In this document: positions 50,235 to 51,385 of the stretch, in pieces
Numbering within the stretch: the first letter of the stretch is position 1
Layout: the number at the start of each line of letters is the position of its first letter
From: Lepidodermella squamata
Taxonomy: Eukaryota > Animalia > Gastrotricha
Length of the DNA: 64,000 bases
Assembly: GCA_047495785.1 (NCBI GenBank)
Contig: JBLDXI010000006.1
Span: 248,001 to 312,000, forward strand
Direction: 5' to 3'
Translations under genes and position numbers: made by a program
Notes under the pieces: model-generated
Told to the model about the DNA's origin: nothing
What the model saw: the letters and a program-made list of their open reading frames with translations, nothing else
Databases searched by the model: none

Positions 50235-51385
50235 CTACATTAAGGAAGCGCGGCACATCGGACACGTTGGATTAGCAGCCAACCACCGGTTGACGCACAG
50301 CAGGTGAAATCGATGGCCACAGGCTAGGGTCCGCGTTGAGCAAGCATTTGCAAGCATCGAATCCAAGCAGATCGAACAATGTTGAGCCGATGACGCATAC
50401 AGAGTTTCAAAATCTTAAATTAACAAAAAAAATGATTAATAAAAATTTTATAAAATTAAAAAAAAATCACTTCCTGTTTCCTTCATGTCTACTGAATTTT
50501 AAACTGATGAAGTATTTTATCGAATTTTAGGCAGTTTTATTTTACAAAGTTCAACATTTTTTTGAAAAATTAAAATTATTTTCAGGAATTAAAAATTTCT
50601 TTAATTCGGAAAGTCCCAAAAAATGAGATAATTTCAGATTTTTGGTTTGGGTTTATAAAAGGTTCTGAAATCAACTGCTTACTGTTGCCACCAGCATGCA
50701 GTAGCTGTTTTGCGGCCGCATAGCTCGCCTCAGCCAGGGCAAAGTAGTAGGCTGATTTCGACTCAGCTGTCTCATAGCATTCAGCCTCGACCAGAATCGC
50801 AAATTTTCGAAGAATCGCAGTATTCCGGAAATCGGCCTCTATTCTCAAATTGTCGACAACGTTCTGGAGAACCTTCTGCCGCTCAGCGACTCCGAAATTC
50901 GCATGCCAGTCGAATTTGATGGGCACCAAAGTCGGTTGTAAATCGATGACTGTATCGACTTGAGCCCCAGCATTTCTAGCCTCGGCAAGTTTCGGTTGAC
51001 TTCGCCCGCCCAGCGCTCGAACTTCAGCACAAACCGGGCACTTGCTGTCAACGCAGTGCTGCCAATGCCGGATAATTTGACGGGTCGATCGGCACGATTT
51101 AAACGGGCAATCAGTCTCGTTTCGGCACTGCCTCAAATGCTGGATAACATCGGTCATTCGTTGGCAATATCGAACCTTGCACTCGTGATGAATTTCGGTG
51201 ATATTTTCGCCATTAGCTAGCGCCAATCTCTGGCAGATATCGCGCCGTTTTGAACACTTTCTCGCGTGAAGAATCAATATTAGGTGATTTTGAATACCCA
51301 CTCGCTTAGCCTCGGGCAGGGTTGGCGATGAGTCGGGAATCGGTTGCTGATCATCGGTTGGCGGGTAACTTTGCGCGGCAAGCAT
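50235..51385 (-). CDS. TAZ1 zinc finger + KIX + RING-H2 protein, ~293 aa (exons 51385-50683, 50413-50235)
   Basis: TAZ1: IQNHLILILHARKC...C...C..M..V..H...C....C...SC.STRQII.HW.HC....CPVC. KIX: DWH......R....N.V......E.ECYE.AESK..YY..LAE. A phase-1 intron (a|gtaagc ... tttaag|at) joins CSIC-x15[14 protein letters not shown]-x4-TCPMCR. Confidence 0.82.

What the first reader, a model, noticed from the sequence alone, without database searches (positions are those of the whole stretch)
50235..51385. Hidden exon turns a mini-CBP (TAZ1-KIX) into a RING-H2 fusion: candidate coactivator-decoy E3 ligase
Seen: the ORF track shows only TAZ1+KIX running into AT-rich sequence. A strong donor at 50682 (aaca|gtaagc) and an acceptor at 50414 (tttaag|) join in phase to a 179-nt exon encoding a complete C3H2C3 RING-H2 (CSIC-x15[24 protein letters not shown]) and a stop. 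There is no HAT domain, bromodomain or TAZ2. Established: in CBP/p300, TAZ1 binds the activation domains of HIF-1a, CITED2 and STAT2, and KIX binds pCREB, c-Myb and MLL; RING-H2 domains recruit E2s; CBP's own RING is an atypical module in the catalytic core, not a RING-H2 after KIX. Inference: the gene keeps two transcription-factor docking surfaces of CBP and replaces the acetyltransferase with a ubiquitin ligase. It could capture activated transcription factors (or CBP-targeting viral proteins) and degrade them. I do not know this architecture from characterised proteins.
Basis: partly seen in the sequence, partly recalled or inferred. Interest (0 to 1): 0.9.

Follow-up and report, generated by a model that had tools for sequence, protein, structure and literature searches.

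The report
CBP docking domains fused to RING
A small two-exon animal gene joins the two transcription-factor docking domains of the coactivator CBP/p300 (TAZ1 and KIX) to a standard ubiquitin-ligase RING finger, so it probably tags activator proteins for destruction; the gene model is well supported and belongs to a small family no paper describes, but expression and activity are untested.

Summary
On the minus strand, exon 1 (51385-50683) encodes a CBP/p300-type TAZ1 finger and a divergent KIX domain. A GTAAG donor and the only usable acceptor join it in phase to a 179-nt exon (50413-50235) encoding a canonical RING-H2 and a stop, giving 293 aa.

The join is supported without RNA:
- Both exons are 51% GC and the intron is 22%.
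- The RING frame has no start of its own.
- Metagenome contigs encode the same TAZ1-KIX-RING order (305-320 aa) in one uninterrupted ORF, collinear with the spliced product across the junction.
- A tree built on TAZ1-KIX alone puts exon 1 inside that RING-bearing clade (100/99).

All 12 TAZ1 and 8 RING zinc ligands, the RING's E2-contact residues and the KIX phosphoserine-contact pair are kept. All three domains are under purifying selection in relatives.

The most likely function is a RING E3 ligase that selects substrates through their activation domains. This is inferred, not shown.

No searched paper describes this fusion. The nearest precedents are plant BTB-TAZ adaptors, rice F-box-KIX proteins and the N-terminal E3/E4 activity of CBP/p300. 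The scan has already noted paralogues elsewhere in this genome.

The parts
51429..51436 (-). TATA-like motif (TATATAAG) 44-51 nt upstream of the start codon; possible core promoter
   Evidence: Motif scan. This is a consensus match only, with no transcription-start data.
50683..51385 (-). Exon 1 (703 nt, phase 1 at its 3' end): start codon, TAZ1 and KIX
   Evidence: An in-frame TAG lies 3 codons upstream of the ATG. GC is 0.512. The N-terminus is collinear with relatives.
51029..51295 (-). TAZ1 zinc finger (residues 31-119). The three HCCC zinc sites are H40 C44 C69 C74, H83 C87 C93 C98 and H107 C111 C116 C119. The first loop carries a 12-residue insertion relative to CBP.
   Evidence: Pfam zf-TAZ E 9.4e-15. 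Best PDB sequence matches are p300/CBP TAZ1 entries 1l3e, 1u2n, 1r8u and 1l8c at E 1e-13 to 1e-15. The AlphaFold2 model has pLDDT about 90 here and matches 7lvs and 7qgs at TM 0.80-0.81 normalised by target. The ligands are invariant in alignment A2.
50693..50911 (-). Divergent KIX domain (residues 159-231): a short W160-H161 turn and three helices (166-184, 189-206, 210-231). Y222 and K226 align with CBP Y658 and K662.
   Evidence: Pfam KIX and KIX_2 score E about 4e-4, below the gathering score. A profile of the RING-bearing family alone hits CBP KIX at E 2.4e-7 over the whole domain. The model matches KIX structures 6dmx and 1kdx at TM 0.66-0.73, probability 0.98-1.0. It aligns collinearly with Pfam-significant KIX domains.
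50414..50682 (-). Intron (269 nt, GT...AG, 21.9% GC) in the linker between KIX and RING
   Evidence: The donor is GTAAGC. The acceptor TTTAAG is preceded by a T-rich tract. The tubulin gene in the same window also uses a GTAAG donor.
50235..50413 (-). Exon 2 (179 nt including TAG): linker, RING-H2 and C-terminus
   Evidence: The RING reading frame is closed by TAA at 50417-50415, and no Met precedes the first Cys. The exon must therefore be spliced in phase 1. The C-terminus ends 5 residues after the last Cys, as in relative P0005.
50253..50378 (-). RING-H2 finger (residues 247-288: C247 C250 C266 H268 H271 C274 C285 C288). The E2-contact positions I249, W278 and P286 and the 'linchpin' R289 are present.
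   Evidence: Pfam zf-RING_2 E 4.9e-13. The closest solved RINGs are RNF165/ARK2C, Arkadia, RLIM, RNF38 and ZNRF3 at E 1e-11 to 1e-9. The 15-residue first loop is shared with the family.
50077..50082 (-). AATAAA, 153 nt downstream of the stop; possible polyadenylation signal
   Evidence: Motif scan. This is a consensus match only.

Best explanation
The locus is an intact two-exon animal gene for a 293-residue protein with three domains, in this order:
- a CBP/p300-type TAZ1 zinc finger;
- a divergent CBP-type KIX domain;
- a C-terminal RING-H2 finger, after a linker of about 18 residues.

It is a member of a small, unannotated, multi-copy family with this same order.

Shown here: the gene model, the three folds and their metal ligands, family membership, and purifying selection on all three domains in relatives.

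Inferred: the protein is a single-chain RING E3 ubiquitin ligase. TAZ1 and KIX would bind acidic/amphipathic activation domains of transcription factors, including phospho-KID-like ones. The RING would bring a UBE2D-type E2~ubiquitin to the bound factor. Activators would then be ubiquitinated, most likely for degradation, and at the same time kept away from the real coactivator. I put the gene model at about 0.9 and this mechanism at about 0.5.
For: Gene model:
- The join is in phase, and only one acceptor keeps the RING whole.
- The RING frame has no start codon.
- GC and GC3 are the same in both exons and collapse in the intron.

Independent 'natural cDNA' evidence:
- P0003, P0005, P0016 and P0157 (305-320 aa) encode TAZ, KIX and RING-H2 in one continuous ORF on ENA contigs L001-L008.
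- They align with the spliced product end to end, at 30-36% identity, with no gap at the junction.
- A maximum-likelihood tree on TAZ1-KIX only puts exon 1 in the RING-bearing clade with 100/99 support, apart from CBP-like TAZ-KIX proteins.

Domains:
- TAZ1.
- KIX.
- RING-H2 nearest to active monomeric E3s that work with UBE2D.

Functional residues, combined with established structures such as 1KDX:
- all 20 zinc ligands are kept;
- RING positions I249, W278, P286 and R289 are present;
- KIX Y222 and K226 correspond to CBP Y658 and K662, which contact phospho-Ser133 of CREB.

Selection: dN/dS for P0003 against P0157 is 0.32 for TAZ, 0.18 for KIX and 0.19 for RING.

Precedents for docking domains serving ligases:
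- rice F-box-KIX proteins (PMC3936767);
- BTB-TAZ proteins with CUL3 (PMC7848006);
- a fish RefSeq model with TAZ1, three KIX domains and a SOCS box (P0014).
Against: - There is no RNA evidence for this locus. The one possible RNA run, X1, is only guessed to be RNA and holds 30% of the sampled words, at unknown positions.
- The acceptor is AAG, which is usually a weaker acceptor than CAG or TAG (my own knowledge). I could not measure its frequency in this genome.
- The window protein's own KIX scores are below Pfam's gathering threshold.
- Some KIX surface positions differ from CBP. For example, by alignment F612 is replaced by R and K606 by N, so partner specificity may differ.
- P0016 has V at the K662 position.
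- No binding, E2 pairing or ligase activity has been measured for any family member.
Confidence: 0.55

Rival explanations
1. Writer swap. DNA-bound transcription factors recruit the protein through TAZ1 and KIX, exactly as they recruit CBP. The substrate of the RING is not the factor itself but chromatin or neighbouring coregulators, such as histones, CBP or Mediator. The protein would then be a coactivator or corepressor that writes ubiquitin where CBP writes acetyl.
For: The domain anatomy is the same as in the main reading, and nothing in the sequence tells substrate from recruiter. CBP uses these same domains for recruitment, not as substrate sites (established knowledge).
Against: The protein is only 293 residues and no nucleosome- or histone-binding module was detected. 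The linker between KIX and RING is short, about 18 residues, which places E2~Ub next to the bound peptide. There is no experimental data either way.
Confidence: 0.2
2. Regulated decoy. The protein mainly competes with CBP/p300 for activation domains as a dominant-negative mini-coactivator. The RING serves chiefly for its own turnover by auto-ubiquitination, or for docking to another complex, not for substrate degradation. A variant of this reading is a trap for foreign (viral or transposon) proteins that target CBP.
For: TAZ1 and KIX are kept while all catalytic parts of CBP are missing. The family is multi-copy in one metagenome sample. Unchecked scan notes say it is also multi-copy in this genome. 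This would fit a rapidly diversifying system. The window protein is only 30-36% identical to its nearest relatives.
Against: The RING is as strongly constrained as KIX (dN/dS 0.19). It keeps every E2-contact residue and the linchpin Arg, which is more than a passive module would need. No viral or mobile-element context lies near the gene. dN/dS below 0.35 gives no sign of an arms race.
Confidence: 0.15
3. The gene model is wrong. The transcript is not spliced at 50683/50413, so the product is the 267-residue TAZ1-KIX protein that ends in the AT-rich tail. The RING exon would then be a relic or part of another transcript.
For: There is no RNA evidence. The acceptor is AAG. The unspliced ORF is open for 33 further codons.
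Against: - The read-through tail has GC3 of 0.281 against 0.53 in the exons.
- The RING exon is intact and has the same composition as exon 1.
- The RING frame cannot start on its own and needs a phase-1 partner, which the only GTAAG donor provides.
- Relatives carry the RING in the same ORF at the same place.
- Exon 1 alone falls in the RING-bearing clade.
Confidence: 0.08

Closest known systems
CBP/p300 (KAT3 coactivators), N-terminal TAZ1-KIX region
   Same: The TAZ1 is of CBP/p300 type. It has about 35% identity to solved TAZ1 domains, all 12 zinc ligands and an SxRQII-HW motif. A KIX domain follows it in the same order and at similar spacing. The N-terminal regions of CBP and p300 are themselves reported to carry E3/E4 ubiquitin-ligase activity towards p53 (PMC6478392).
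   Different: The gene has no bromodomain, atypical CBP RING, PHD, HAT (KAT11), ZZ, TAZ2 or IBiD. Its 293 residues compare with about 2400 in CBP. TAZ1 has a 12-residue insertion in its first loop. KIX is divergent. The ligase module is a canonical RING-H2 that CBP lacks.
Arkadia (RNF111) / RNF165 (ARK2C) / RLIM (RNF12) / RNF38-type C-terminal RING-H2 ligases
   Same: These are the closest solved RING sequences, at E 1e-11 to 1e-9 and about 47% identity over 49 residues for RNF165. The RING is C-terminal, and the Ile, Trp and Pro E2-contact residues and the linchpin Arg are kept. From established knowledge, several of these ligases degrade transcriptional regulators.
   Different: Their substrate-binding parts (SIM/NRG/TIER regions, basic domains) are unrelated to TAZ1 or KIX. 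The first RING loop here is 15 residues, as in its own family, against 14 in RNF165.
Plant BT proteins (BTB-TAZ), substrate adaptors of CUL3 ligases
   Same: A TAZ zinc finger is placed in a ubiquitin-ligase context and is used to reach transcription factors (PMC7848006).
   Different: BT proteins use a BTB domain to dock onto cullin-3 and have no RING of their own and no KIX. No BTB domain was found in the window protein. The lineage (plants) is different, so the origin is probably independent.
Rice F-box-KIX (FBX-KIX) proteins
   Same: A KIX domain is joined to an E3 module. The authors proposed that KIX selects proteins for proteasomal degradation (PMC3936767).
   Different: They have an F-box (SCF adaptor) instead of a RING-H2, and no TAZ1. 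They are plant proteins, and that review says functional analysis was still to be done.
Unannotated TAZ1-KIX-RING-H2 proteins on ENA metagenome contigs (P0003, P0005, P0016, P0157, P0158)
   Same: They have the same three domains in the same order, a similar length (305-320 aa for the complete ones), the same 15-residue RING loop, a collinear alignment and a common clade.
   Different: They are only 30-36% identical to the window protein. They have no intron between KIX and RING. Their source organism is unknown and none carries a name in any database searched.

Membership tests
TAZ zinc finger, TAZ1 (CH1) subtype of CBP/p300 | Three HCCC zinc sites in the canonical order | tested here: met
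   The sites are H40 C44 C69 C74, H83 C87 C93 C98 and H107 C111 C116 C119. All are invariant in alignment A2.
TAZ zinc finger, TAZ1 (CH1) subtype of CBP/p300 | Profile score above Pfam's gathering score, and closer to TAZ1 than to TAZ2 | tested here: met
   PF02135 scores 55.3 bits against a cut-off of 25. PDB TAZ1 chains match at E 1e-13 to 1e-15, TAZ2 chains at 1e-4 to 1e-8.
TAZ zinc finger, TAZ1 (CH1) subtype of CBP/p300 | Four-helix TAZ fold | tested here: met
   The AlphaFold2 model has pLDDT about 90 in this domain. It matches 7lvs and 7qgs at TM 0.80-0.81 normalised by target.
KIX domain (CBP/p300, MED15 type) | Pfam KIX or KIX_2 score above the gathering score | tested here: not met
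   The window protein scores 21.2 bits against 27 for KIX and 20.7 against 25.6 for KIX_2. Relative P0005 does pass KIX_2, with 27.6 bits.
KIX domain (CBP/p300, MED15 type) | Homology detectable by profile over the whole domain | tested here: met
   A profile of the RING-bearing family alone (A3) hits CBP KIX at E 2.4e-7 (chain residues 5-80 of 88) and MED15 KIX at E 1.8e-4. HMMER also aligns query residues 16-233 collinearly to proteins with strong KIX domains.
KIX domain (CBP/p300, MED15 type) | Three-helix bundle preceded by a short turn that carries the conserved Trp | tested here: met
   Model helices are 159-162, 166-184, 189-206 and 210-231. Matches to 6dmx, 1kdx and 4i9o have TM 0.66-0.73 normalised by target and probability 0.85-1.0.
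RING-H2 E3 ubiquitin ligases | C3H2C3 ligand pattern with canonical spacing, and a profile score above the cut-off | tested here: met
   The pattern is C-x2-C-x15-C-x-H-x2-H-x2-C-x10-C-x2-C. PF13639 scores 49.6 bits against 27.3.
RING-H2 E3 ubiquitin ligases | E2-contact residues (Ile in the first CxxC, Trp before the last ligand pair, Pro in the last CxxC) and the linchpin Arg/Lys after the last Cys | tested here: met
   I249, W278, P286 and R289 are present and align with RNF165. The roles of these positions are established knowledge from RNF38, Arkadia and RNF4 structures.
RING-H2 E3 ubiquitin ligases | Ubiquitin transfer with an E2 | not testable with these tools
   This needs an in vitro ubiquitination assay.
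CBP/p300 (KAT3) coactivator family | HAT (KAT11) catalytic domain with bromodomain, atypical RING/PHD, ZZ and TAZ2 | tested here: not met
   None of these was found in the protein. The gene is bounded by other genes on both sides. It shares two domains with CBP but is not a CBP/p300 orthologue.
Unannotated TAZ1-KIX-RING-H2 family (P0003, P0005, P0016, P0157) | Same domain order and full-length collinear alignment | tested here: met
   Alignment, at 30-36% identity and with the junction codon inside a gap-free linker.
Unannotated TAZ1-KIX-RING-H2 family (P0003, P0005, P0016, P0157) | Common clade when only the TAZ1-KIX part is used | tested here: met
   Support is 100/99 for the 8-row clade against 9 CBP-like TAZ-KIX rows. 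The 17 rows were chosen by me from the top hits.
Plant BT (BTB-TAZ) and rice F-box-KIX adaptors | BTB domain or F-box | tested here: not met
   Neither domain appears in the Pfam scan of either exon. The resemblance is in logic only.

The most novel reading that the evidence does not exclude
This gene and its paralogues form a lineage-specific family of 'activation-domain reader' E3 ligases. These would be natural single-chain degraders that recognise transcription factors by the same surfaces that CBP/p300 uses, including the phosphorylated KID of CREB. Activation of a factor would then directly license its ubiquitination. That would give a physical basis to the long-noted overlap of activation domains and degrons.
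Probability: 0.4. Interest if true: 0.8.

Novelty: new variant of a known kind. Interest (0 to 1): 0.6.

Why it matters
If the inferred function holds, this is a compact natural ligase whose substrate receptor is the coactivator's own docking surface. It would link a transcription factor's activation (binding to TAZ1 or KIX, possibly dependent on phosphorylation) directly to its ubiquitination.

That would bear on an old question: why activation domains and degrons overlap. It would also offer a natural template for degraders aimed at activation domains, which are hard to target with drugs.

Plant BTB-TAZ and F-box-KIX proteins, a fish TAZ1-KIX-SOCS-box model and this RING family would then look like repeated, independent inventions of the same solution.

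Even without the function, the case shows that ORF-only annotation hides the ligase half of the gene.

Tried and rejected
- RNA test of the junction. The look-up of sequencing runs gave one possible RNA run (X1, kind only guessed, 30% of the sampled words) and the probable source assembly X2. No reads were laid.
- Word-indexed protein search with exon 1 found nothing at E<=1e-3. The exhaustive HMMER search was needed to find relatives.
- An exact search for the spliced junction (35 nt) in JGI metagenome contigs gave 0 matches.
- The search for related loci with the family alignment in the same collection confirmed no relatives.
- ESM Atlas search with full-length relative P0005 gave no usable hit. 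With exon 1, it found only TAZ-KIX clusters without a RING.
- Taxonomy from the beta-tubulin gene was uninformative: identity is at most 86% to animals of many phyla. The organism stays unidentified. 'Rotifer' is another agent's unchecked suggestion.
- Micro-synteny with L004, where Cys-loop receptor genes lie near the relative, was rejected as evidence. Order and orientation differ, and the receptor match is only at paralogue level.
- A kinase or pseudokinase N-terminal exon, reported for paralogues in scan notes, is not present here. No such ORF lies upstream, an in-frame stop precedes the ATG, and a + strand gene intervenes.
- A paralogue inside the window: none found.
- dN/dS on near-identical pairs (P0003/P0151, P0005/P0154) rests on too few changes to mean anything.
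- Literature searches for a KIX or TAZ fusion to a RING-H2 found no paper describing one.
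Full report
**1. The observation**

- The ORF starts at ATG 51385. An in-frame TAG lies three codons upstream.
- Unspliced, the ORF runs to a stop at 50582 (267 aa).
- The donor AACA|GTAAGC has its GT at 50682-50681, so exon 1 is 51385-50683, 703 nt, phase 1.
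- The acceptor TTTAAG| has its AG at 50415-50414, so exon 2 is 50413-50235, 179 nt including the TAG stop.
- Joined, the CDS is 882 nt and gives 293 residues with no internal stop.

Pfam finds three domains.
- zf-TAZ at residues 31-119 (E 9.4e-15, 55 bits against a cut-off of 25).
- KIX and KIX_2 at residues 159-228 (E about 4e-4, below the gathering score).
- zf-RING_2 in exon 2 (E 4.9e-13).

The RING reads C-x2-C-x15-C-x-H-x2-H-x2-C-x10-C-x2-C.

**2. Is the splice real?**

I could not test this with RNA. The look-up of sequencing runs returned one run guessed to be RNA (X1, 30% of the sampled words of 49800-52000) and the probable source assembly (X2).

Four indirect lines agree that the splice is real.

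(a) Composition.
- Exon 1 is 51.2% GC, the intron 21.9% and exon 2 51.4%. The flanks are 33-34%.
- GC3 is 0.526 and 0.534 in the two exons and 0.281 in the read-through tail.

(b) Logic of the frames.
- The RING frame is closed by TAA at 50417-50415.
- No Met precedes the first Cys.
- No other AG lies between that stop and the first Cys.

The RING can therefore be expressed only by splicing at 50414 onto a phase-1 exon. The only GTAAG donor at the end of the TAZ-KIX ORF is phase 1.

(c) Relatives with no intron at this site.
- An exhaustive HMMER search of 1.84 billion representatives gave 653 hits.
- Among the best 150, P0003 (305 aa), P0005 (309 aa) and P0016 (314 aa) carry a RING-H2 right after TAZ and KIX.
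- A profile search added P0157 and P0158.
- The four whose contigs I fetched (P0003, P0005, P0016, P0157) are continuous ORFs on ENA metagenome contigs.
- The spliced window protein aligns with the three clusters (P0003, P0005, P0016) from the N-terminus to the C-terminus at 30-36% identity. The junction codon falls in a gap-free part of the KIX-RING linker, just after a conserved Ala/Ser-Gly.

(d) Phylogeny on TAZ1-KIX only.
- Exon 1 groups with the RING-bearing proteins at 100/99 support, apart from nine CBP-like TAZ-KIX proteins.
- The 17 rows were my selection from the top hits.

The tubulin gene in the same window shows that this genome uses GTAAG donors. I put the gene model at about 0.9.

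**3. The three domains**

TAZ.
- The best solved matches by sequence are p300/CBP TAZ1 (1l3e, 1u2n, 1r8u, 1l8c; E 1e-13 to 1e-15).
- TAZ2 entries are much weaker.
- All twelve zinc ligands are kept. The first loop carries a 12-residue insertion.

KIX.
- The window protein alone is sub-threshold in Pfam.
- A profile made only from the RING-bearing family hits CBP KIX at E 2.4e-7 over the whole domain, and MED15 KIX at 1.8e-4.

Structure. An AlphaFold2 model of exon 1 (mean pLDDT 78, about 90 in TAZ1 and 82-91 in KIX) shows both domains.
- A TAZ fold matches 7lvs and 7qgs at TM 0.80-0.81 normalised by target.
- A short turn plus three helices matches KIX structures 6dmx, 1kdx and 4i9o at TM 0.66-0.73 normalised by target.

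KIX contact residues.
- By alignment, Y222 and K226 stand at the positions of CBP Y658 and K662. These contact phospho-Ser133 of CREB in 1KDX (established knowledge).
- The Tyr is invariant in the family. The basic residue is kept in most members but not in P0016.

RING.
- The closest solved relatives are RNF165/ARK2C, Arkadia, RLIM, RNF38 and ZNRF3 (E 1e-11 to 1e-9). These are active C-terminal RING-H2 ligases.
- The E2-contact Ile, Trp and Pro and the linchpin Arg are present as I249, W278, P286 and R289.

Selection. Between P0003 and P0157, dN/dS is 0.32 for TAZ, 0.18 for KIX and 0.19 for RING. All three parts are maintained.

**4. Context**

- The gene is bounded upstream by a divergently oriented Cys-loop receptor gene: ligand-binding domain at 52339-52857 and membrane domain at 53524-54129, + strand.
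- It is bounded downstream by a + strand ORF ending at 49999.
- There is no room for HAT, bromodomain or TAZ2 exons, and none was detected.
- A TATATAAG lies 44-51 nt before the ATG, and an AATAAA lies 153 nt after the stop. Both are only consensus matches.
- There is no paralogue inside the window.
- The organism is an animal that I could not place. The beta-tubulin gene was uninformative.

**5. Mechanism**

Shown: an intact gene for TAZ1, KIX and RING-H2, with the ligands and contact residues needed for each part, in a conserved family.

Inferred:
- The protein is a single-chain E3 whose substrate receptor is the coactivator's docking surface.
- TAZ1 and KIX bind activation domains.
- The RING, tethered about 18 residues after KIX helix 3, brings E2~ubiquitin to the bound factor.
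- Competition with CBP adds a second layer of inhibition.

Rivals:
- A 'writer swap', in which transcription factors recruit the ligase to chromatin or coregulators.
- A regulated decoy whose RING mainly controls its own turnover, including an anti-viral trap variant.
- A wrong gene model.

The data do not separate the first two rivals from the main reading. They argue strongly against the third.

**6. Comparison with what is known**

- The protein is not a CBP/p300 family member, because the whole catalytic core is absent.
- Its RING is an ordinary RING-H2, unlike CBP's atypical RING. That domain (PF06001) is seen in hit P0021 after the bromodomain.
- Docking domains in ligase contexts are known. 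Rice F-box-KIX proteins were proposed to select proteins for degradation (PMC3936767). Plant BTB-TAZ proteins work with CUL3 (PMC7848006). The N-terminal regions of CBP and p300 are reported to have E3/E4 activity on p53 (PMC6478392).
- Among the hits, a RefSeq model from the fish Myripristis murdjan joins TAZ1 and three KIX domains to a SOCS box (P0014).
- I found no paper describing a TAZ or KIX fusion to a RING-H2.
- None of the five family clusters carries a name or comes from an annotated proteome.
- The ESM Atlas gave no large cluster for a full-length member.
- These searches are not exhaustive. Only the best 150 of 653 HMMER hits were visible.

**7. Earlier notes of the scan**

The scan has noted the same architecture at other places of this genome: TAZ-KIX-RING, KIX-RING and kinase-TAZ-KIX-RING. 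One follow-up calls two such genes expressed. I could not read those loci, and I used the notes only as leads. No kinase exon belongs to the present gene.

**9. Verdict**

- Novelty: a new variant of a known kind, namely a RING-H2 ligase with an undescribed substrate-recognition module in a small unannotated family.
- Interest is about 0.6.

Noticed in passing
P0014 (RefSeq XP_029933398.1, Myripristis murdjan), not in the window: A predicted 550-residue fish 'p300-like' protein joins TAZ1 and three KIX domains to a C-terminal SOCS box (a cullin-5 adaptor motif). This looks like a second, independent fusion of CBP/p300 docking domains to a ubiquitin-ligase module.
   Followed up: partly
L004:566-1218 and 11279-11929; window 47779-48348 and 52339-54129: Cys-loop receptor genes lie near the TAZ-KIX-RING gene both in the window and on metagenome contig L004. 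Order and orientation differ, and the match is only 38-45% identical over short stretches. This is a hint of shared lineage at most.
   Followed up: partly
ENA samples ERZ23486764, ERZ23486787, ERZ27332993 (loci L001-L008): The same few metagenome samples hold three or four distinct TAZ-KIX-RING paralogues (P0003, P0157, P0005/P0154 and P0016 types). The contigs are 33-37% GC and carry animal-type neighbours (Fibrinogen_C/PAN, Neur_chan). The family therefore seems to be multi-copy in an unidentified small animal there too.
   Followed up: partly
window 58124-59459, minus strand: A beta-tubulin gene has a 57-nt GTAAG...TAG intron after codon 19. Its product is at most about 86% identical to any of the listed beta-tubulins, which is unusually divergent for this protein.
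   Followed up: partly
window 54167-56776 (minus) and 57300-57839 (minus): An 869-residue single-ORF ankyrin-repeat protein lies upstream on the same strand. Next to it is a 179-residue ORF with a weak F-box-like match (E 4.6e-5, below the cut-off).
   Followed up: no
window 49301-49999, plus strand: A 232-residue ORF with no Pfam match converges on the 3' end of the TAZ-KIX-RING gene. Its 3' end lies about 80 nt from the candidate AATAAA of that gene.
   Followed up: no
P0001 (Watersipora subatra), P0004, P0006-P0008, not in the window: The best-scoring hits to the TAZ domain are invertebrate proteins made of two or three tandem TAZ fingers and little else. Examples are a bryozoan 'uncharacterized protein' and a mealybug 'cbp-1-like' protein.
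   Followed up: no
window 19173-21356 and 44252-45436, plus strand: Two papain-family (Peptidase_C1) cysteine protease genes. The first has a long N-terminal extension of about 300 residues before the I29 propeptide.
   Followed up: no
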